The position numbers and the translations under genes were made by a program. The notes under the pieces were generated by a model. The model saw nothing but the letters and a program-made list of their open reading frames with translations. It was not told the DNA's origin and did not search any database. From positions 62,001 through 126,000 of the IMG/VR virus record IMGVR_UViG_3300027816_000052: a DNA stretch of 64,000 nt, one strand, 5' to 3'. This document shows, in pieces, positions 6,418 through 32,043 of this stretch. Positions within the stretch are counted from its first letter, which is position 1. Each line of letters opens with the position of its first letter.

Positions 6418-8003
6418 TATTTCTTATTAACAATTTGAAATTTAATGGCTCTCTTATAAGTATCCTTTTCTCCACTAGTATTCACTTTTAAGTCAACAAA
6501 ATATTCATTCGGGAGCTTATCTCTCATATCAAAAATAAAATAATATTCATTTGGTGTTCTATTAACTAATGTCCAATCTTGAACCTGAACTTCGGTTTGA
6601 CCCTCTCTCACATAAACTCTATAATAAACCTCAACATCGGTTAAAAGTTGTTGTGTTGTATATGCTTTTTTAACAATAACACCAATTTTTCTAACATCAG
6701 TATTTAATATTTTTTCATCCTGTTTAATTCCATAAAAATCAAATCCTAAAATCGCGGGTTCTTTTGATTCAGTACCAATGTTAAAATAACTACCATAAGG
6801 TTTTATGATTAAATCATTTTCAACATTTGGTAATGGAATTCCATTGATTGCAATATTGCTCCAAACATCGGTATATTGACAAGGTGTTGTAATTCCTGTT
6901 ATAGAGGGAATCGTTACCTCATATATACCTTTTGTTATTAAGCACGTTGTTAACCCCATATAACCAGATATCGGGTCTCCATTGGTATCTAAAATTGATA
7001 CAACTGGATTGTTATCAAAATTTACATAATCACCATTAACATATGCGTAAAGATAAAGTTTGTTTTGTCTGTACTGAACAAAATTATTTCTATCATCTTG
7101 TATTAAATCATCATAAACCGTCTCAAGATATGGTTCATAAAATGTTTGTGTGTGTCTGGTAAAGAATCCAACGGAATAATTTTCAGATAAGCCGGTTAAA
7201 TTCTCAAGTTCAGGTTTAAATGCAATTCCCCAACCTGTAACACCCGTTAATGAACCATTTATAATTGAATTTATTTCATTTGTCATATCAAATTCAATAT
7301 CCTCATTTCCAAATTCAAAATGTTGGATATTGACAATGGTAATTGCGCTATAATTAATATTTCCGTTATTCTCATTGTTATATATTCCCGGTTCAGACCA
7401 ATAATCTAAAGTTGTTCTTTTTAACCAATTTGAGGGTCTCTGAGAGTATGACTTGTCTTCTGGTTCATAAAGTGGAACAGAAGCTCCCTGAGTCGAATTT
7501 AATGAGGTTGAGAAGTTATTATAATCATAACCAACACCTTCATCCCATAAAGCCAGTCCTTGGTCATAAATGCAAGTTGTTATTGCGGTTGGGTTTGGTA
7601 TAATTGGGTCGCAAGGGTCAATTGGTGTTGGTATTGGATTTCCGCTAATTGTACATGCTGCAATTTGGGGAATTCTAAATAAAATTAAATCAAAAGATGT
7701 TGCTCTTCTTCTACCGGAAGAATCTAATATATTTAATAGTTCTTTGTCAAAAGCGGATGTATTTGTCATACGTAACGTGTGGGTCATCGCTGTTGTACAC
7801 CCAGTTGAAATTGTTGTTCCAGTTATCTTATCAATTAATGGTTCTAAGTCCAAATCAAAGATAAATCTTGTATAACCTTTTGGAGCGATAGAATTGGGGT
7901 TTGTACCAAAATACAACTCAGTTACCGGATTTTGTCCGGTGTTTGTGCAATTATTGTAAATAATGGTATTATTTCTGCTAAAATATGACCTGTGTATTGA
8001 CAT
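6417..8003 (-). CDS. putative virion structural (baseplate-region) protein
   Basis: 528 aa, beta-rich composition, preceded by ATATTTAT, near the gp5-like gene. Confidence 0.5.
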   Translation of the reverse strand: MSIHRSYFSRNNTIIYNNCTNTGQNPVTELYFGTNPNSIAPKGYTRFIFDLDLEPLIDKITGTTISTGCTTAMTHTLRMTNTSAFDKELLNILDSSGRRRATSFDLILFRIPQIAACTISGNPIPTPIDPCDPIIPNPTAITTCIYDQGLALWDEGVGYDYNNFSTSLNSTQGASVPLYEPEDKSYSQRPSNWLKRTTLDYWSEPGIYNNENNGNINYSAITIVNIQHFEFGNEDIEFDMTNEINSIINGSLTGVTGWGIAFKPELENLTGLSENYSVGFFTRHTQTFYEPYLETVYDDLIQDDRNNFVQYRQNKLYLYAYVNGDYVNFDNNPVVSILDTNGDPISGYMGLTTCLITKGIYEVTIPSITGITTPCQYTDVWSNIAINGIPLPNVENDLIIKPYGSYFNIGTESKEPAILGFDFYGIKQDEKILNTDVRKIGVIVKKAYTTQQLLTDVEVYYRVYVREGQTEVQVQDWTLVNRTPNEYYFIFDMRDKLPNEYFVDLKVNTSGEKDTYKRAIKFQIVNKK

Positions 8004-25715: not shown

Positions 25716-26000
25716 ATGAGAACAAAAAATAAAAAACCAACAAGAATAACTGAAAAACAGTTAGTAGCAATACTTAAAAAAGTAATTAATGAGCAAGATT
25801 CTTCAGAATATGATGATAATGAAGATGAAAAAGAAGAACATATTAAATTTATTGAAGATGCGGTATATGATTCGGCAATGAGTATTATAGGAAATTTAAT
25901 AGCGGTTATTGATGACAACTATGAAGAAGGTATTGTTTTTGCTTTAGAGGAATTGGATTCTATTAAAAAAATTATAATGGATGTAAAAACAAGTTATTAA
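25716..26000 (+). CDS. acidic protein with head-leader motif
   Basis: TRITEKQLVAILKKVINEQ; ATATTTAT at 25687. Confidence 0.65.
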   Translation: MRTKNKKPTRITEKQLVAILKKVINEQDSSEYDDNEDEKEEHIKFIEDAVYDSAMSIIGNLIAVIDDNYEEGIVFALEELDSIKKIIMDVKTSY

Positions 26001-26001
26001 T

Positions 26002-26415
26002 ATGAAAAATTTATTAAAAATTACAGAAGACGAAAAAAAGCATATTTTAACTATGCACAAAACCAAAATTAATGAAAGTGATTTTGGTAGAATTGCTGGC
26101 GCTATTGCGGCAACAGGAGCAATAATGACACTAATATTGGCGCAAAGAGCGGTCGATATTTATGATTCAGAAGGAAATTCTGTTGAGGCTAATGTTGGTG
26201 ATACATATACTGGTATTGTAACTGAAATGGTAGCAAAACCAAAAATGGGATTTGTTGTTAAAATGGAAACAGATGATGGTCATACTTTAGATTTCATGAC
26301 ATATTACAATAATTTTGTAACAGGTGATAAAATTAAGGTTGTTATTGGACGAGAATTTAATTCAGGTGGAATGATGGTGTTTCCTGATGTAACACACACA
26401 GAAAAAGTTAAATAA
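26002..26415 (+). CDS. protein with head-leader motif, one hydrophobic helix and an OB-like beta domain
   Basis: KITEDEKKHILTMHKTKINES, then IAGAIAATGAIMTLILA. Confidence 0.65.
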   Translation: MKNLLKITEDEKKHILTMHKTKINESDFGRIAGAIAATGAIMTLILAQRAVDIYDSEGNSVEANVGDTYTGIVTEMVAKPKMGFVVKMETDDGHTLDFMTYYNNFVTGDKIKVVIGREFNSGGMMVFPDVTHTEKVK

Positions 26416-26436
26416 TAAGTTTTATATTTTTAATAA

Positions 26437-26474
26437 AAATTCCCCCACTAGTTTTTAGCTAATTGGGGGAATTT
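26437..26474. terminator. intrinsic terminator between convergent genes
   Basis: aaattccccca...tgggggaattt 11-bp stem. Confidence 0.7.
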
Positions 26475-26487
26475 ACTATTAAAAAAT

Positions 26488-27069
26488 TTAAATTCCAGTC
26501 GATCCAAACCCGTTTGAACCTCTTGTTTTTTCGTTTATTACGTCAACCTCAGAAACTGAAACATAACCACCACAGATTGCAGGTGATAAAACACCTTGTC
26601 CAACCTTCATTCCCTTTTTAATAACAATATCATGACCATTGGTGTTAAACAATATAACTTTTACCTCTGAAGTGTATCCATTATCTATTGTCGCAGGAGA
26701 ATTTAATACCATTAATCCCTGATTAATCGCTAGACCGCTTTTACTTCTAATTTGTAACTCATGTCCAGCGGGTAAATCAAAAGCTAATCCAGTCGGAATT
26801 AAAGCCCTTCCAAACGGTCCAATTGTTACCTCTTCAGTCGAATGAAAATCAAATCCCGAATCACCATCATAATTATATTTTGGTAAAACAGCATCGGGAT
26901 GAAGTTTCTTAACGTTTAATTCAATTTTTGGTTGCGCCATGCTAAATAATGTTGTAAATTCATCAAGTTCAGAATCAATTTCATCACCAATAGTTTCTTG
27001 CCAATTAGGTGATTGCATTTTCTGTTTAAGTTGTTCTAATTTTTCTCTAAGTTCATCAAGACTATCCAT
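26488..27069 (-). CDS. dut: trimeric dUTPase
   Basis: GDSGFD, IRSKSG, ATIDNGY, GQG, RGSNGFGSTG motifs. Confidence 0.93.
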   Translation of the reverse strand: MDSLDELREKLEQLKQKMQSPNWQETIGDEIDSELDEFTTLFSMAQPKIELNVKKLHPDAVLPKYNYDGDSGFDFHSTEEVTIGPFGRALIPTGLAFDLPAGHELQIRSKSGLAINQGLMVLNSPATIDNGYTSEVKVILFNTNGHDIVIKKGMKVGQGVLSPAICGGYVSVSEVDVINEKTRGSNGFGSTGI

Positions 27070-27070
27070 G

Positions 27071-27769
27071 TTAATTTAATTTTTCAAGTTTAGATACGAC
27101 CATCATTAATACCTCGACATCTTTCTCACAATATTCAGCAATTTCTTTAGTCCCCTTGCTCCAATAATGTTCATGTACTTTACTTCCATTTACTTCACCA
27201 GTTTTAGATGAGTCAACACCAAGAGAAGCACACATTAATTCGAGAGTTGCGATTGAGAAATTATTACCATATTGCCAAAAATCTTTTGTATCAATTGCTT
27301 TAACCTCCCAAGGTTTTGTATCAAATGCGGGAAGAATAGCTGGTGGTTTTATTCCATTAATAATCATTCGTTTACATAGCATTGGGATATCGAATAATTT
27401 AATATTATGACCACACAAACTAAAATCCATTTTTGCAACTTTATTAAGCAAAGCCTTAACTTCACTTAATAATGTTTTTTCATCCTCATTTGAAAACGTT
27501 TGAATTTTAATTTCTCCATCAGGAGTTATAAAACCAAAGCTAGCAACAATTATTTTACCAAATTCAGGTAATAAAGCCGATTTACTTAAATAAAGTTCGT
27601 CAATTGTTAAATCTTTATCTTCAGGATATCGTTTTCTAAACCAGTCTTGGTATTTCTCAAACTGAATCGCTAAACTTGGATGATTTTCCTTTAAGGTTGT
27701 GAAGTCTTTTTCAAGCCCAACCGTTTCCAAATCAAAAAAAAGGATTTTACTAATAGGTTTATTAAACAT
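27071..27769 (-). CDS. stand-alone DnaQ/PolB-type 3'-5' exonuclease
   Basis: FFDLET, GHNIKLFDIP, YCEKDV (DEDDy). Confidence 0.85.
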   Translation of the reverse strand: MFNKPISKILFFDLETVGLEKDFTTLKENHPSLAIQFEKYQDWFRKRYPEDKDLTIDELYLSKSALLPEFGKIIVASFGFITPDGEIKIQTFSNEDEKTLLSEVKALLNKVAKMDFSLCGHNIKLFDIPMLCKRMIINGIKPPAILPAFDTKPWEVKAIDTKDFWQYGNNFSIATLELMCASLGVDSSKTGEVNGSKVHEHYWSKGTKEIAEYCEKDVEVLMMVVSKLEKLN

Positions 27770-27773
27770 TTTT

Positions 27774-29023
27774 TTAAATTATTGATTTATAAAATTCCGC
27801 TCTGTTTTTAGTAACAATTGATAATTCATATTTATCTTTGACTGTTTCATAAAGTCTTTCACCAAGGTCTTTAGCCCAATTTGGATTTTGAATAAGTTTC
27901 TTCATGTACTTTGCCCAATCACCATGATTTCTATTTTCATTTACCAAAAGTGCATTACCATCAACAAATTTACCATTTTCCAATGCATGGGTCAAGTCAA
28001 TGGTATATGGACCAACATCTGAAGCTATAATTGCTTTCTTATAGAAACCCGCTTCAATAACTTTAAGCTGCGATTTCATTCGATTAAACATATGATTCAT
28101 AATTGGTGCTAAGGATACATCAAATTTTGTATAATTCTTTGCATATGATGTTATTGGTCGGGTCCAAACTCTTTCATATGGTTCATTCTTAAATTTAGTT
28201 GTATCAAATTCAACAAATTTATCCAATTCTTTTTTATATTCCGGTGAAACCAAATTGTATTTATTTGTAAAAATTTCTTCATATTTAACCCACACCGTTT
28301 CATGTGGTTTAATTGGTCTTTTCTTTTGTTCACCAGTTTGCTGATTAATTTCAGTTATTTCACCTCTAGTATCAAAACCACAAAGGAAAACTTTCATTTT
28401 ATCTTTTTCTGATGAAAGTGCGTTAAATGTACCATCCAACAATTTTAAATCATGTAAGTGAGATGAACCACCTAACCAACCAAAACGAAGTCTCTCATCT
28501 TCTTCTGTAACACCTTTAAATTGTTCTGTTTTTGTATCAATTGCATTTGGAAATACAACAACATCATTATGGAATTTTCTTATTTGGTCAGCAAAAATTT
28601 CTGTTGTTGTTGTAATATATTTTGCATATCTAAGACTTTCAATAATCTTCTCATTAATTTTATGTTGTACAATTACCGAATGCAAAGGATGTTCTTTTGT
28701 GGGTAACCAATAATCATCGATATCTGCAATCGTGATAATACCCATATTGTTAAGCATTTTAACAATTTCTGGAGACCTATCATAATCTCTACCAATACTT
28801 CGATGGTAGTGAACAATTTGATATTGCTTCCAATAATTTAAATTATCAACTTGTGGGTCGTAATCGATATCCACATGAAAATCATCCGGATACATGTTTT
28901 GTAACATTATGTGGGGGTCTACTGATCTGTAGGAACCTAACCAACCCCCGAACGGTCAGATGGGAGTACTAAGACTCGAATCTTTTCACGACCGTTAAGG
29001 GGCGAAATTTGTGTGTTTGTCAT
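27774..29023 (-). CDS. GT4-like glycosyltransferase with a frame break at 28935-28939 (bypass, frameshift or pseudogene)
   Basis: Upstream frame MTNTQ...IRVLVLPSDRSGVG* (29023-28937) continues in another frame as SYRSVDPHIMLQ...; motifs DIDD, GWLGGSSH..DL, APIM...FNRMKSQLKVIEAG. Confidence 0.8.
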
Positions 29024-29138
29024 CTTTATCTATAAGATATAGTAATAATTTATTGTTTTTATAAATTATAATCAAAATTTTTGATTAGTTCAAGTTTTTT
29101 ATAATTTATTTTTTTAAACCAATAGAATATTTATAATT

Positions 29139-29900
29139 ATGAAAAAGATAAAATTAACAGAATCAGATTTATATAGAATTGTTAGAAAGGTTCTTCTTGA
29201 GCAAGAGGAAGAAAAGAGAAGTTTTACATTTTCTCCGGGAACATTTGCGTCTTTTATAACATCATCATCAGGTGAAAGATTTGTTAAACATCTTAATAAC
29301 AAATATGATGAGGTTATTATTAATGGTGATTTGGATTTAGATGGAACACCAATTCAATCCTTACCTGATAATCTTCATGTTGGTGGGGATTTGAATTTAT
29401 ATGGAACACCAATTCAATCCTTACCGGATAATCTTTATGTTGGGAGAAATTTGGATTTAAGAGGAACACCAATTCAATCCTTACCGGATAATCTTTATGT
29501 TGGGAGAAATTTGGATTTACAAGGAACACCAATTCAATACTTACCGGATAATCTTCATGTTGGGGGAAGTTTGTGGTTAAATGGAACACCAATTCAATAC
29601 TTACCGGATAATCTTCATGTTGAGGGAAGTTTGGATTTAAGAGGAACACCAATTCAATCCTTACCGGATAATCTTTATGTTGGGGGATATTTGAATTTAC
29701 ATGAAACACAAATTCAATCCTTACCGGATAATCTTTATGTTGGGGGATATTTGAATTTACATGAAACACAAATTCAATCCTTACCGGATAATCTTTATGT
29801 TGGGGGGACAATTTATATTAATGGAATACCTTTAAATGATAATGATAAGTTGGTTGCAAAATATAAAGAAAAATATAGAATTGATAGAGCACTTATTTAA
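29139..29900 (+). CDS. LRR-like repeat protein (8 x 20 aa) with head-leader motif
   Basis: Leader MKKIKLTESDLYRIVRKVLLEQ; repeats LxVGGxLxLxGTPIQSLPDN. Confidence 0.85.
   Translation: MKKIKLTESDLYRIVRKVLLEQEEEKRSFTFSPGTFASFITSSSGERFVKHLNNKYDEVIINGDLDLDGTPIQSLPDNLHVGGDLNLYGTPIQSLPDNLYVGRNLDLRGTPIQSLPDNLYVGRNLDLQGTPIQYLPDNLHVGGSLWLNGTPIQYLPDNLHVEGSLDLRGTPIQSLPDNLYVGGYLNLHETQIQSLPDNLYVGGYLNLHETQIQSLPDNLYVGGTIYINGIPLNDNDKLVAKYKEKYRIDRALI
29320..29810 (+). repeat. 60-nt tandem repeat array, 8 units
   Basis: Successive 60-nt lines align in register (ggaacaccaattcaatccttaccggataatctt...). Confidence 0.95.
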
Positions 29901-30480
29901 CCTTCTTAGCCTTTGTAATTTTACCCTCAAAAATTGTTTTACCAACTTTGAACTGGATAGTTTCATTTACTTTTGATGTATTTTCAATCAATAACCCATT
30001 TTCCTCTAAAAGTTCTTCAAATACTTCGCGCATCATTGACTTTAATTCATTTTTATTCGGTAATGATGTAATTTGTTTTGATTGAACATTAGACGGAGTT
30101 TCTTGTCGTTTTGTACCCATCAATCTGCTAGCTTTCTCAACTAATTCATCAGATAGTGCTGTTGTTGGTGGTTGCGGTTGCTGAATGGGGTGTTCAATCA
30201 TTAATTTCTTAATTTCATCTGGAAGTCTTGAATTTAAAATTCTATCCTTAACAGGAACCGCTGAATTAATTGGTTTTGGTTTTACTTGCTGTTCTGAAAG
30301 ATATTCCTGTGGGATATTATATTTAACATCGGGAACTTCAAAATCGTCAACCTGAGGTCTTTCTACATTTATTCTAGTATTTTCACTTATTCCTATATCA
30401 CTAGTCTGACCTCTAGGAATTTTATTGTGTTTATCCATTATTTTTTTGGATATCATTAGTTTTTCAATAAGTGCGTCCAT
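29893..30480 (-). CDS. hypothetical protein
   Basis: 195-aa ORF, ILNSRLPDEIKKLMIEHPI. Confidence 0.65.
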   Translation of the reverse strand: MDALIEKLMISKKIMDKHNKIPRGQTSDIGISENTRINVERPQVDDFEVPDVKYNIPQEYLSEQQVKPKPINSAVPVKDRILNSRLPDEIKKLMIEHPIQQPQPPTTALSDELVEKASRLMGTKRQETPSNVQSKQITSLPNKNELKSMMREVFEELLEENGLLIENTSKVNETIQFKVGKTIFEGKITKAKKVK

Positions 30481-30485
30481 AGTTT

Positions 30486-31289
30486 TTAGAATTTAGCATT
30501 AATAATAAGACGATTCATGGATTTGTCACCAGTTCTGTTATAATTTGGTCTAACTTCATTAAATTTTTCATCGGTAGGGATGTAAGTCATGATTTTATCA
30601 ACCCTAAATAAACGCCAACCCGGAAGTGGTTGTGTACCCAAAAAATCTGTGTGTGATGCACCCAAAAAGTCCCAAGCTCTTAATACTTGATTACCAGCTT
30701 TTGAGTAACCAAAAGCAACAGGTTCAATTTCTCTATTACCTTTACCTCCGGGTTCATCACCATCATAATACATGACCGTAATTCGTTTATTTTTTATCGA
30801 ATCCATAATCGAATCAATTTTATTTCCAGTTTTTGGAACATCAGTTGGTATTTCTGGTTCATATTCGTCTGGTCTAAAATTCTTGATTATAAGTTTAATC
30901 GCATCATCGGTATAACCAGCAGATTTTAAATCACCAACTAAATCTTCAGATGGTTCATATTTTCTTTTGAATGTTGTTGTATTAATTAATTCTTTTGCAA
31001 CAGCATCCATAAGATTTTTATCCATACCCGTATTTTTAAGTATGGATGCGGTAATTTTACCAAACTCTTGAACAGTAATTCGCCCTTCTTTTATTGCGTC
31101 AATAAGTTCTTGACCTGTTTTAGCGACAACTGGATTACCTTCAGAATCTACGTAGGTAATACGTTTAAATCTTGAAACAGAATCTAATGCATTTTTGACA
31201 ATATCATCGCTAACCCCCGCAAAAACATCTTCTCTTGCAGGAATTAATTGTTCAATAATTAAACCGGTTAGCGATTCAAGTAATCTCAT
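30486..31289 (-). CDS. WYL-like domain protein with short leader
   Basis: C-terminus YY.G...G.REIEPVAFG...LRAW...WRLFRVDKI; N-terminus MRLLESLTGLIIEQ. Confidence 0.65.
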   Translation of the reverse strand: MRLLESLTGLIIEQLIPAREDVFAGVSDDIVKNALDSVSRFKRITYVDSEGNPVVAKTGQELIDAIKEGRITVQEFGKITASILKNTGMDKNLMDAVAKELINTTTFKRKYEPSEDLVGDLKSAGYTDDAIKLIIKNFRPDEYEPEIPTDVPKTGNKIDSIMDSIKNKRITVMYYDGDEPGGKGNREIEPVAFGYSKAGNQVLRAWDFLGASHTDFLGTQPLPGWRLFRVDKIMTYIPTDEKFNEVRPNYNRTGDKSMNRLIINAKF

Positions 31290-31582
31290 TGTCCAAAATC
31301 AGGATATGGCTTATTGTTGCTGTATTTATTAAATTTTAAATCACCAATTCTTTCGACATTATCTGTTAAATTACCTGCGGCTGTGTTATAAACATCTAAA
31401 TCACCACCGGTACCTTTACCTTTTTCATCTCCGTCAGCAAGAGCATTTGGATTAACATCCGAATATTCGTTCGTTTTCTTATAGTCGTTCTTTGGGAACA
31501 ATTTTGCCCTTTCAGCTTCAGCTATCTTTGAAAGGTTATTATTTTCTATTTGATTTGTATCAATTGGTTCTAAGTTTGCCAT
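31286..31582 (-). CDS. hypothetical protein
   Basis: 98-aa ORF within the operon. Confidence 0.65.
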   Translation of the reverse strand: MANLEPIDTNQIENNNLSKIAEAERAKLFPKNDYKKTNEYSDVNPNALADGDEKGKGTGGDLDVYNTAAGNLTDNVERIGDLKFNKYSNNKPYPDFGQ

Positions 31583-32043
31583 TATAGTAATTTTTTCATT
31601 AAATCATTTATTCTTTTTAGACTTTCAGTAACCTGATTATCAAATTTTTGAATCATTTTACTGTTATTTGCATCGACTTTTGCAATGTTAGGAACAATGT
31701 CGATAAATTCACTATTATCAACAGTATATTCTTTTTTTCTATCTTGTGTTGTTTTTAGAGATTCTCTTGACGAACCTAATGTTTGTTCAATCCAATTTTT
31801 AACTTTGTCTCCACCATTTAATACATAGGGAACATCTTCTTTTCTTCCTTGGTATTTATCGAACCAATTTTTCATTCTTTTCAATTGCTGATACGTAATT
31901 GAATTAGTATTTTGTAGTTCTTGGTTTCTTCTATAACCTTCAATATTAGAATCTGCATCAGGACAAAGACGGAAGCACACTTTTAAATGTTGTCGAAGAT
32001 AGTCAGGAAATGGATATTTTTTACCATATAAATTACTGTTCAT
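31582..32043 (-). CDS. hypothetical protein
   Basis: 153-aa ORF (ITYQQLKRMKNWFD...LNGG..VK.W). Confidence 0.65.
   Translation of the reverse strand: MNSNLYGKKYPFPDYLRQHLKVCFRLCPDADSNIEGYRRNQELQNTNSITYQQLKRMKNWFDKYQGRKEDVPYVLNGGDKVKNWIEQTLGSSRESLKTTQDRKKEYTVDNSEFIDIVPNIAKVDANNSKMIQKFDNQVTESLKRINDLMKKLL

What the first reader, a model, noticed from the sequence alone, without database searches (positions are those of the whole stretch)
28907..29023. Glycosyltransferase split by GGT-TAG-GT inside a GC-rich hairpin: candidate 5-nt translational bypass
Minus strand reads ...GAC CGT TCG GGG GTT GGT TAG GT TCC TAC AGA TCA GTA GAC CCC CAC ATA ATG. A 28-codon upstream frame stops at TAG (28939-28937). 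A matching GGT lies 5 nt downstream (28937-28935) in the frame of the main ORF. Hopping GGT to GGT gives PSDRSGVG-SYRSVDPH, restoring the D..G.G.YR..P N-terminal motif typical of these GT-B enzymes (414 aa total). The site is enclosed by GGGGGT (28949-28944) / ACCCCC (28918-28913) pairing with an inner TAGG-TT-CCTA, and an upstream AACGGTC/GACCGTT pair, which is unusual GC richness for this genome. Established: T4 gene 60 bypassing uses matched Gly codons, an adjacent UAG and a stem-loop. Alternatives are -1 slippage or phase variation on the G5 run, or a simple inactivating 5-nt insertion.
Basis: partly seen in the sequence, partly recalled or inferred. Interest (0 to 1): 0.75.

Follow-up and report, generated by a model that had tools for sequence, protein, structure and literature searches.

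The report
Phage gene read by ribosome hopping
A phage sugar-transferase gene is interrupted by five extra bases that include a stop codon. Comparison with about sixty relatives indicates that ribosomes hop over this tiny gap, which was brought in by a selfish homing-endonuclease gene. This looks like the first natural family of 'stop-hops'.

Summary
On the minus strand a 28-codon ORF ends GGT TAG, and the glycosyltransferase (GT) continues 5 nt later after a second GGT. The 5 nt are real: eight independent assemblies and DNA and RNA-library contigs are identical. The closest intact allele differs here by exactly these 5 nt.

The window is one member of a family. About 60 distinct uncultured freshwater phage GT genes are interrupted after the same Gly codon. 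A stop (TGA, TAA or TAG) always follows the take-off codon GGY. A cognate GGN sits directly before the resume codon in all but one. Gaps are 5, 6, 9 or, in that exception, 8 nt. TAG occurs only in 5-nt gaps, where its G starts the landing codon. One gene has AGC at both take-off and landing.

Both coding parts are under purifying selection and no copy is decayed.

The interruption travels in a mobile cassette with a NUMOD3/PD-(D/E)XK homing endonuclease (HEG) directly upstream. The window keeps only a remnant of it.

Best reading: programmed short translational bypass, a 'stop-hop', parallel to T4 gene 60/mobA. No protein-level proof exists.

The parts
28995..29135 (-). Degenerate 3' remnant of the cassette's homing endonuclease gene; its last codons overlap the GT start.
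   Evidence: Minus-strand frames read KKLELIKNFDYNL and KNNKLLLYLIDKDDKHTNFAP*. These match the C-termini of the intact endonucleases in L008, L032 and L078. tblastn at E<=1e-3 finds no full gene in the window.
28940..29023 (-). ORF1: 28 codons from ATG to the take-off Gly codon. It consists of an 11-residue N-terminal extension plus strand beta1 and the Gly-rich loop of the GT.
   Evidence: Intact homologs start MSKIKVLVLPSD. The extension is shared by all interrupted genes. dN/dS of the last 21 codons among cassette copies is 0.18.
28990..29003 (-). 5' arm of a predicted upstream hairpin (GCCCC..AACGGTC).
   Evidence: The 96-nt fold is -32.6 kcal/mol, z = -2.75. Across the family 83% of cells are paired and two pairs covary.
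28944..28957 (-). 3' arm of the upstream hairpin (GACCGTT.GGGGGT). It includes the family-invariant GGGG(T) run two bases before the take-off codon. The run can pair instead with the downstream ACCCC.
   Evidence: The first Gly of SGVG is GGG in 58/58 site-unbiased interrupted genes (55/55 in the third-position table) against 3/40 intact genes. It is the only invariant four-fold site in the stretch that the search pattern left free.
28940..28942 (-). Take-off codon GGT (Gly28).
   Evidence: Take-off is GGY in all 58 site-unbiased interrupted genes and AGC in L122, never GGR. Intact genes use GGT, GGA or GGG here.
28937..28939 (-). TAG stop in the A site at take-off.
   Evidence: A stop follows the take-off codon in every interrupted gene: TGA 39, TAA 15, TAG 4. 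TAG occurs only in 5-nt gaps.
28935..28939 (-). The 5 untranslated bases (TAGGT). The landing triplet GGT is 28937-28935.
   Evidence: Exactly these 5 nt are absent from the closest intact allele L218. They are present in all DNA and RNA-library contigs.
27774..28934 (-). ORF2: resume codon TCC, then 386 codons plus stop; the body of a GT-B (GT4-like) glycosyltransferase.
   Evidence: PHROG 7162 glycosyltransferase, E 8e-43. The AF2 model of homolog P0002 (pLDDT 86) matches GlgM, PglA, MshA and BshA. dN/dS against other interrupted genes is 0.08-0.21.
28913..28918 (-). ACCCCC (codons Asp-Pro), the 3' arm of the predicted hairpin that encloses take-off codon, stop and landing codon.
   Evidence: GAC CCC is nearly invariant in interrupted genes. 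Three C-to-T changes keep a G.U pair and two sequences break it. Intact genes have GAC in 24/40 and CCC in 14/40.

Best explanation
The GT is expressed by a programmed short translational bypass, a 'stop-hop'. Translation starts at ATG 29023. When the Gly codon GGT (28942-28940) is in the P site and TAG is in the A site, decoding stalls. Peptidyl-tRNA-Gly lets go of the take-off codon and re-pairs with the GGT 5 nt downstream (28937-28935). Translation resumes at TCC and yields a 414-aa enzyme with the normal ...SGVG-SYRSVDPH... N-terminus. The interruption was not a random mutation. It is the right-hand end of a mobile cassette made of a free-standing homing endonuclease gene, a new 5' end for the GT (start codon and 11-13 extra residues encoded in the endonuclease's 3' end), and a 5-9 nt insert after the Gly codon. 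By analogy with T4 mobA/gene 60, the insert most likely breaks the endonuclease's target site and protects the carrier, and the hop keeps the gene usable. In the window the endonuclease has decayed to a remnant while the hop site and the GT stay intact. Shown by comparison: the interruption is real and conserved; a stop and, in all but one gene, a cognate landing codon are always present; both coding parts are under selection; the site is linked to the endonuclease; the cassette is mobile. Inferred: the tRNA re-pairing itself, its efficiency, the stimulatory role of the G-run/C-run hairpins and of the nascent peptide, and the immunity function.
For: (1) The interruption is real. (2) A search anchored only on the N-terminal extension, about 45 nt upstream, returned 58 distinct GT 5' ends. 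All are interrupted right after S-G-V-G. One further gene has the extension but no interruption (L167), and one has a matched AGC variant (L122). (3) Geometry fits re-pairing. Take-off is always GGY and always followed by a stop. GGN lies directly before the resume codon in 57/58. Gaps are 6 nt (51), 5 nt (4), 9 nt (2) and 8 nt (1). The hop product always has the spacing of intact homologs. (4) TAG occurs only in the 5-nt gaps, where its G is the first base of the landing GGY. In L122 the take-off is AGC and the 5-nt landing triplet is AGC, built from the A of TGA; intact homologs with SGVSKFRS exist. (5) Stops changed among TGA, TAA and TAG but never to a sense codon, although neighbouring four-fold sites show 3-4 different bases. 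(6) Selection: dN/dS is 0.18 for the 21 codons before the stop and 0.08-0.21 after it, with pS 0.44-0.69. Of the 58 genes, 38 have a complete 385-403-codon ORF, the other 20 run off the contig end still open, and none is truncated. In a separate tally of distinct GT bodies, 13 have lost most or all of the endonuclease yet keep an intact GT. (7) GGG before take-off is found in 58/58 against 3/40 intact genes, and L167, which has no interruption, has GGA GTT GGA. (8) No suppressor tRNA is encoded and all three stops terminate genes in this genome. The -1 and +1 frames are closed in the 6-nt class. (9) Cassette: the endonuclease or a remnant is upstream of 36/40 interrupted but only 4/43 intact genes. 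GT-body and cassette phylogenies disagree, with at least 13 switches. The pairs L066/L040 and window/L218 delimit the cassette. (10) Precedent: T4 gene 60/mobA, synthetic stop-hops, and landing on any GGN in gene 60 constructs.
Against: There is no protein or reporter evidence. Stop-hops without stimulators are described as low-level in E. coli constructs, so the efficiency here is unknown. L008 (8-nt gap, 2.6x coverage contig) has AGC rather than GGN at the landing position. Five genes pair take-off GGY with landing GGA, which is not a perfect match for a GCC anticodon. The AGC/AGC covariation rests on a single contig. The hairpin columns are almost invariant, so covariation support is weak, and the window's 45-nt hairpin is not exceptional (z = -1.56). 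The phage shows no Shine-Dalgarno use, which argues against an SD-like role for the G run. GT bodies are swapped by recombination with intact alleles, so part of the purifying-selection signal downstream may predate each invasion.
Confidence: 0.72

Rival explanations
1. Null allele. The selfish endonuclease cassette carries a dead 5' end with a stop. The GT is simply inactive in carrier phages, and the intact-looking downstream ORFs reflect recent invasions of functional genes.
For: The cassette moves between GT backgrounds, so a downstream ORF could be young in its interrupted state. No protein evidence exists. Unstimulated hops are inefficient.
Against: The cassette-borne 21 codons before the stop have dN/dS 0.18 at pS 0.44. 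The stop never became a sense codon, and the landing codon is kept through indels of 5, 6 and 9 nt and through the AGC variant. GGG and GGY are fixed at synonymous sites. The endonucleases are deeply diverged, with branches up to 0.9, and many have decayed. Yet 0 of 58 GT genes show a second lesion. The window and L008 are sister GT bodies, both interrupted, with dN/dS 0.08.
Confidence: 0.1
2. Another recoding route. The in-frame 6- and 9-nt relatives use stop-codon readthrough, giving 2-3 extra residues. The window either uses a -1 slip on the G5 run (product SGGWLGSYR) or is a dead frameshifted derivative.
For: 51 of 58 genes are in frame. The window's downstream frame is open back to 28955, so a -1 shift at the G run would join the frames.
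Against: Four distinct 5-nt variants and the AGC variant need a frame change, yet all keep a cognate landing triplet. Under readthrough a sense mutation would be harmless or better, but none is seen. The extra residues would sit at the N-cap of helix alpha1, right after the Gly-rich loop. The Val and Gly codons between the G run and the stop are selected in frame 0; for example GTT to GTG is synonymous only there. The -1 frame is closed in the 6-nt class. No suppressor tRNA is encoded. The window type is widespread and has an intact ORF2.
Confidence: 0.1
3. Split enzyme. The 28-aa peptide and an independently initiated C-terminal protein are made separately and may associate.
For: Gene callers annotate a 377-aa ORF from ATG 28907.
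Against: That Met is not conserved (K, F, H or R in relatives) and no other start codon is conserved after the stop. The C-terminal piece would lack strand beta1 and half of helix alpha1. There is no ribosome-binding signal, although the phage uses none anyway.
Confidence: 0.04
4. Sequencing or assembly error, or phase-variable length of the G run.
For: Homopolymer runs are error-prone.
Against: The sequence is identical in eight independent assemblies and in contigs of four runs, with no indel. The interruption is conserved in diverged relatives with different sequences. Contigs cannot exclude rare length variants.
Confidence: 0.01

Closest known systems
Phage T4 gene 60 translational bypass with the mobA homing-endonuclease cassette (Manning & Atkins, bioRxiv 10.1101/2022.08.31.505936, and work cited there)
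   Same: Both have matched Gly take-off and landing codons and a stop codon directly 3' of take-off. The take-off codon lies in the 5' arm of a predicted stem-loop, with a second potential hairpin 5' of it. The site is near the N-terminus (codon 46 in T4; 26-30 here). A homing endonuclease gene sits directly upstream and is often degenerate. The cassette repeatedly invades the same gene of related phages, and the insert is thought to protect against the endonuclease.
   Different: The gap is 5-9 nt, not 50 nt, so the landing codon abuts or overlaps the stop, or follows it after one extra codon, and no long-range mRNA sliding is needed. Most copies are in frame. The host gene is a glycosyltransferase, not topoisomerase. 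The host gene is not split in two by the endonuclease. The two cassettes are not homologous.
[quoted passage not shown] 2016, PMC5009743)
   Same: The geometry is that of the 6-nt class: codon, stop, cognate codon. A slow A-site codon provokes re-pairing of the peptidyl-tRNA.
   Different: Those are engineered and low-level. The review states that no natural occurrence of in-frame stop hopping is known. Here the arrangement is natural, conserved across about 60 genes, and accompanied by conserved flanking sequence.
Magnusiomyces capitatus mitochondrial 'byp' elements (described)
   Same: Both are short GC-richer inserts in an AT-rich genome that spread as mobile elements and are rendered harmless by bypassing. 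Take-off and landing pairs are sometimes imperfect.
   Different: Byps are 27-55 nt, are numerous per genome, use an unassigned sense codon rather than a stop, occur in mitochondria, and have no linked endonuclease.
prfB (RF2) programmed +1 frameshift (general knowledge, not tested here)
   Same: Both have a G-rich run (AGGGGG in prfB; GGGG(G)U here) 2-3 nt upstream of a P-site codon followed by a stop, and both shift forward.
   Different: prfB shifts +1 onto an overlapping codon and depends on Shine-Dalgarno pairing. Here the shift is 5-9 nt onto a separate or barely overlapping codon, and the phage shows no SD use.
Free-standing phage homing endonucleases with NUMOD3 motifs and a PD-(D/E)XK (Vsr-like) nuclease domain
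   Same: Domain content, intergenic position, presence/absence polymorphism, a co-converted flank, and frequent decay.
   Different: Here the protected allele carries a translationally bypassed insert rather than only silent substitutions. Relatives L029, L035 and L054 show the silent-substitution solution next to intact GT genes.

Membership tests
Programmed translational bypassing / stop-hop (as a mechanism) | Take-off codon and landing codon are cognate for the same peptidyl-tRNA. | tested here: met
   Window: GGT to GGT. Family: GGY to GGN in 57/58. L122: AGC to AGC. The exception is L008.
Programmed translational bypassing / stop-hop (as a mechanism) | A slow-to-decode codon (stop) lies directly 3' of the take-off codon. 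| tested here: met
   A stop is present in every interrupted gene, with all three stop codons used.
Programmed translational bypassing / stop-hop (as a mechanism) | Resuming at the codon after the landing site restores the conserved protein, whatever the frame or gap length. | tested here: met
   Gaps of 5, 6 and 9 nt all give SGVG + (K/S)(F/Y)RS, as in intact homologs.
Programmed translational bypassing / stop-hop (as a mechanism) | A stimulatory mRNA structure has the take-off codon in its 5' arm. | tested here: inconclusive
   RNAalifold predicts GGGGU.GGY paired with RUN.ACCCC. 91% of cells pair, against 57% or less when the partner is slid. The columns are nearly invariant. The window fold has z = -1.56 for 45 nt and -2.75 for 96 nt.
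Programmed translational bypassing / stop-hop (as a mechanism) | A nascent-peptide signal and a bypass protein product are demonstrated. | not testable with these tools
   An N-terminal extension makes the nascent chain 26-30 residues long at take-off. Its role is unknown and no proteomic data were available.
T4 gene 60 / mobA element (homologous family) | A 50-nt coding gap in the topoisomerase II large-subunit gene next to mobA. | tested here: not met
   The host gene is a GT-B glycosyltransferase. The gap is 5-9 nt. The endonuclease has NUMOD3 plus a PD-(D/E)XK-like domain.
Free-standing homing endonuclease cassette | Nuclease and DNA-binding domains typical of homing endonucleases. | tested here: met
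   NUMOD3 scores 21.6-27.3 bits against a 20.4 cut-off. PHROG 3339 'homing endonuclease' has E 5.5e-10. REase_MTES_1575 is below its cut-off.
Free-standing homing endonuclease cassette | Presence/absence polymorphism at one locus between near-identical genomes, with a co-converted flank. | tested here: met
   L066 against L040, window against L218, and at least 13 switches on the GT tree.
Free-standing homing endonuclease cassette | The enzyme cleaves the empty allele, and the carrier allele is immune because of the insert. | not testable with these tools
   Inferred from the position of the insert at the cassette's right end and from the gene 60/mobA precedent.
GT-B (GT4-like) glycosyltransferase | Two Rossmann-like domains, with strand beta1, a Gly-rich loop and helix alpha1 at the N-terminus. 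| tested here: met
   AF2 model of P0002 has pLDDT 85.9. Foldseek hits GlgM, PglA, MshA, BshA and PimA at E 3e-12 to 1e-9. Pfam Glyco_trans_1_4 and Glycos_transf_1 score only below their cut-offs.
Stop-codon readthrough | The downstream ORF is in the same frame as the upstream ORF. | tested here: not met
   In the window the downstream frame is offset by +2. The feature is met in the 6- and 9-nt relatives, but see the rival explanations.
prfB-type +1 frameshift | A +1 slip onto an overlapping codon, stimulated by SD:anti-SD pairing. | tested here: not met
   The shift needed is +5. There is no SD enrichment upstream of 205 ORFs (6.8% against 10% background).

The most novel reading that the evidence does not exclude
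This is the first natural, evolutionarily maintained family of short-range translational bypasses ('stop-hops' of 5-9 nt). It arose independently of T4 gene 60 but for the same reason: a homing endonuclease protects its carrier by planting a small insert in its own target site, and the ribosome is recruited to skip it. If so, 'endonuclease immunity insert plus recoding' is a recurrent evolutionary solution in phages. Many in-frame stops annotated as pseudogenes or readthrough could then be hops.
Probability: 0.65. Interest if true: 0.9.

Novelty: new variant of a known kind. Interest (0 to 1): 0.85.

Why it matters
Programmed bypassing is known from very few systems: T4 gene 60 and its homologs, and yeast mitochondrial byps. 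The 2016 reference review (PMC5009743) says short stop-hops were seen only in synthetic constructs and that no natural occurrence is known. It adds that counterparts of gene 60 'perhaps involving shorter distances' had long been presumed to exist.

This family would fill that gap. It offers about 60 natural variants to dissect what makes a hop efficient: three stop codons, four gap lengths, several take-off/landing pairs, one matched-codon switch and one natural revertant.

It would also be a second, independent case linking bypassing to homing-endonuclease self-immunity. That turns the gene 60 story from a curiosity into a principle.

Practically, gene callers split or truncate these genes. 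All database entries for the window type are 377- or 373-aa fragments.

Tried and rejected
- blastn of the region against deposited phages found nothing. tblastn found only distant GTs of 33% identity or less, so no cultured phage carries this gene.
- The DNA of P0003, a 95% relative with the same truncated call, could not be fetched.
- A scan for more take-off variants (AGY) gave only L122 plus chance hits.
- A scan for the second extension type (PRLDHRE) added only more GGC TGA GGT cases.
- Rfam has no family at the site.
- An SD-like role for the G run was considered, by analogy with prfB, and downgraded because the phage's 205 ORFs show no SD enrichment.
- A suppressor tRNA or an altered genetic code was rejected. 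The genome has 22 tRNAs and none is a suppressor, all three stops are used as terminators, and ORFs of 120 aa or more called with the standard code cover 83% of the genome.
- A -1 slip or transcriptional slippage on the G run was rejected as a general mechanism.
- Covariation tests of the hairpins are largely uninformative because the columns are invariant.
Full report
OBSERVATION

On the minus strand the window reads ATG (29023) followed by 27 codons, ending TCG GGG GTT GGT TAG. Two bases later comes TCC TAC AGA, in the frame of a 386-codon ORF that ends at 27774.

The downstream frame is offset by +2. It is open back to a TGA at 28958-28956. The 200-nt bin around the site has the highest GC (0.40) in the 6 kb profiled (26000-32000), in a genome of 30% GC.

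The window lies in a 256-kb IMG/VR virus record.

IS IT REAL?

The identical sequence occurs in six JGI metagenome contigs from different samples and in two further IMG/VR contigs. Contigs of two DNA runs and two metatranscriptome runs cross 28600-29118 (to 29036 in run X11) with 0 differences and 0 gaps. Assembly error is therefore excluded. If the RNA-library contigs derive from RNA, the mRNA also carries the 5 nt.

The closest intact allele is L218, which encodes P0002 (92% identical, 403 aa). At this spot it reads TCG GGA GTT GGT TCC TAC AGA. The window has exactly 5 more bases and GGG instead of GGA, and near-identity resumes at the landing codon.

THE WINDOW IS ONE MEMBER OF A FAMILY

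Among the 80 nearest viral-contig relatives of the GT, 12 are interrupted at the same codon.

I then searched viral and metagenome contigs with a pattern for the N-terminal extension only. That extension lies about 45 nt upstream, so the search cannot bias the site itself. It returned 58 distinct GT 5' ends, all interrupted directly after S-G-V-G.

- The take-off codon is GGC (34) or GGT (24), never GGA or GGG.
- The next codon is always a stop: TGA 39, TAA 15, TAG 4.
- In 57 of 58 a Gly codon (GGT, GGC or GGA) lies directly before the resume codon (AAA, or TCC in the window).
- The distance hopped is 6 nt in 51 genes, for example GGC TGA GGT AAA.
- It is 5 nt in 4 genes: GGT TAG GT|TCC in the window type, and GGT TAG GT|AAA and GGT TAG GC|AAA in another lineage.
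- It is 9 nt in 2 genes (GGT TAA CCA GGC AAA).
- It is 8 nt in one low-coverage contig, L008, which lacks a GGN landing codon. This is the one unexplained exception.

TAG is used only in the 5-nt gaps, where its last G must serve as the first base of the landing GGY.

A further gene, L122, has take-off AGC (Ser), then TGA, then GC|AAA. Its 5-nt landing triplet is again AGC, built from the A of TGA. Intact homologs with SGVSKFRS exist. Take-off and landing codons therefore changed together there.

In every case a hop gives the sequence and spacing of intact homologs, SGV(G/S)(K/S)(F/Y)RS.

A second extension type (PRLDHRE...) also carries GGC TGA GGT.

One gene, L167, has the extension but no interruption. 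It also lacks the G run, reading GGA GTT GGA AAG.

THESE GENES ARE FUNCTIONAL, NOT DECAYING

Of the 58 interrupted genes, 38 have enough DNA to show a complete 385-403-codon ORF after the gap. The other 20 run off their contigs with the ORF still open. None is truncated.

Among cassette copies, the 21 codons before the stop have dN/dS 0.18 (pS 0.44). The window's downstream ORF has dN/dS 0.08-0.21 against other interrupted genes, with synonymous sites near saturation.

In the stretch the search pattern left free, every four-fold degenerate site shows three or four different bases, with two exceptions. The Gly codon two codons before take-off is GGG in 55/55, and the take-off codon is only ever GGY. 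In 40 distinct intact genes that Gly is GGG only 3 times, and the take-off position is GGT 18, GGA 12, GGG 5.

The stop has switched among TGA, TAA and TAG but never to a sense codon.

The genome encodes 22 tRNAs, none a suppressor. All three stops terminate ORFs, and the standard code gives 83% coverage by ORFs of 120 aa or more. In the 6-nt class the -1 and +1 frames are closed.

Only re-pairing of the peptidyl-tRNA on the downstream cognate triplet explains the 5-, 6- and 9-nt forms and the AGC form together.

WHERE IT SITS IN THE PROTEIN

An AlphaFold model of P0002 (pLDDT 85.9) has the GT-B fold. Its nearest solved structures are GT4-type enzymes: GlgM, PglA, MshA, BshA and PimA. PHROG 7162 'glycosyltransferase' matches at 8e-43, while the Pfam hits are below their cut-offs.

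Strand beta1 is residues 4-9, the Gly-rich loop is 10-15, and helix alpha1 starts at residue 16. The take-off Gly (G17 of P0002) is therefore at the N-cap of alpha1. A 2-3 residue insertion from readthrough, or a split at this point, would hit the core of the N-terminal Rossmann-like domain.

THE INTERRUPTION IS PART OF A MOBILE HOMING-ENDONUCLEASE CASSETTE

In the relatives, a gene of about 304 codons lies directly upstream on the same strand. It has NUMOD3 motifs above the Pfam cut-off, a PD-(D/E)XK-like C-terminal domain (REase_MTES_1575, below cut-off), and a match to PHROG 3339 'homing endonuclease'. Its stop codon lies 5-29 nt inside the GT ORF. The GT's new start codon and N-terminal extension are therefore encoded in the endonuclease's 3' end.

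Among distinct GT genes with enough upstream DNA, the counts are as follows.

| GT gene | full endonuclease | 3' remnant | none |
|---|---|---|---|
| Interrupted (40) | 27 | 9 | 4 |
| Intact (43) | 3 | 1 | 39 |

The window is one of the four interrupted genes scored 'none' at that threshold. A remnant is nevertheless recognisable at about 29135-28995. Most of the space is now occupied by an opposite-strand repeat protein gene (29139-29900).

The endonucleases next to interrupted genes form one clade (support 100/99) with long internal branches, so the cassette is old. On the GT-body tree, interrupted and intact genes are interleaved. Parsimony needs 19 changes, and well-supported branches force at least 13.

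L066 has the endonuclease and the interruption. L040 has neither. Their flanks and GT bodies are almost identical and differ only by the cassette, which ends just after the Asp-Pro-His codons about 30 nt past the gap. In the window the junction is at the landing codon itself.

This is the signature of homing with a short co-conversion tract. It places the insert at the cassette's right edge, where a target or cleavage site would be expected.

Many cassettes have lost the endonuclease while the GT and the hop site stay intact. That argues against the view that the interrupted allele is a dead passenger.

RNA FEATURES

RNAalifold on 58 aligned 5' regions predicts a hairpin, GGGGU.GGY paired with RUN.ACCCC. 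It encloses the stop and the landing codon and has the take-off codon in its 5' arm. A 12-bp version pairs in 91% of cells, against 57% or less when the partner is slid. The core columns never vary, so covariation says little. One pair shows C-G, U-G and U-A, and three C-to-T changes keep G.U pairs.

The G run can instead pair with an upstream CCCC in the extension, flanked by AAYGGTC/GACCRTT. That structure pairs in 83% of cells, with two covarying pairs. The window's 96-nt fold is -32.6 kcal/mol, z = -2.75.

These resemble the take-off and 5' stem-loops of gene 60, but their role here is inference. An SD-like role for the G run is unlikely because the phage shows no SD signal.

COMPARISON WITH WHAT IS KNOWN

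T4 gene 60 has all of the following:
- matched GGA codons and a UAG after take-off;
- a take-off stem-loop and a 5' stem-loop;
- a nascent-peptide signal;
- an upstream mobA homing endonuclease, a pseudogene in T4, whose cassette spreads the split gene together with the 50-nt insert;
- protection of the carrier from MobA nicking by that insert.

The present system matches this logic point for point. It is not homologous, however. The host gene and the gap scale (5-9 nt) both differ, and the endonuclease's domain content is NUMOD3 plus a PD-(D/E)XK-like nuclease.

Short stop-hops, where 9 nt specify one amino acid, are known from synthetic E. coli constructs. The 2016 review states that no natural in-frame stop-hopping is known. 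In gene 60 constructs the Gly-tRNA can land on GGC, GGU, GGA or GGG, which makes the mixed GGY/GGN pairs plausible.

Full-text searches found no report of bypassing in a phage glycosyltransferase. No cultured phage has a close homolog, and Rfam has nothing at the site.

VERDICT

The site belongs to a family of about 60 natural stop-hop sites. It is the immunity end of a homing-endonuclease cassette. The window is a copy whose endonuclease has decayed.

What remains unproven is the translation event itself and its efficiency, the role of the hairpins and the nascent peptide, and the immunity function.

I rate this a new variant of a known kind (programmed bypassing), with high interest.

Noticed in passing
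window 29139-29900 (+): A 253-aa ORF made of about nine tandem repeats (GTPIQSLPDNLYVGG...). It gives a weak Pfam hit to pAdhesive_15 (26.4 bits against a 23.8 cut-off). It occupies the place where relatives carry the homing endonuclease. The closest intact relative, L218, has only an 80-nt spacer here, so the gene looks like a later insertion or replacement.
   Followed up: partly
L167 (metagenome contig Ga0214923_10012937), about 6590-6720 on the minus strand of the locus: This GT has the cassette's N-terminal extension and an endonuclease remnant but no interruption and no G run (GGA GTT GGA AAG). It looks like a natural revertant or recombinant and would be a useful control.
   Followed up: partly
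L008:1440-1470: This is the only interrupted gene without a cognate landing codon: GGT TAA CTAGC ACT, an 8-nt gap with AGC at the landing position. The contig has 2.6x coverage. It could reflect sequencing error, two-out-of-three landing, or a defective copy.
   Followed up: no
L029, L035/L036, L054-L065 (upstream of the GT): More distant homologs of the same endonuclease (44-54% identity) sit upstream of uninterrupted GT genes that lack the extension. In these genes VLVLPSD is changed to VLVAPSD or VLVTPSD. This may be a different target-site immunity solution.
   Followed up: no
P0005 and P0012: P0005 is a mosaic: its C-terminal half is identical to the window's protein while its N-terminal half belongs to another lineage. 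P0012 (443 aa) carries an internal duplication of about 40 residues. Recombination in this gene appears to be rampant.
   Followed up: no
G000:C1:2182-42026 (outside the window): The phage encodes 22 tRNAs, including tRNA-Gly(UCC) but not tRNA-Gly(GCC). If the phage tRNA reads the GGY take-off codon by weak wobble, that could favour detachment. This is speculative.
   Followed up: partly
whole genome (G000): There is no Shine-Dalgarno enrichment upstream of 205 ORFs; the leaders are A-rich instead. Stop usage is TAA 152, TGA 44, TAG 9. This suggests a host with SD-independent initiation, for example Bacteroidota. The host is unknown.
   Followed up: partly
window 27071-27769 (-) and 26488-27069 (-): Downstream of the GT lie a PolB-type 3'-5' exonuclease-like protein (PF10108) and a dUTPase. 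This gene order is conserved in all relatives examined.
   Followed up: no
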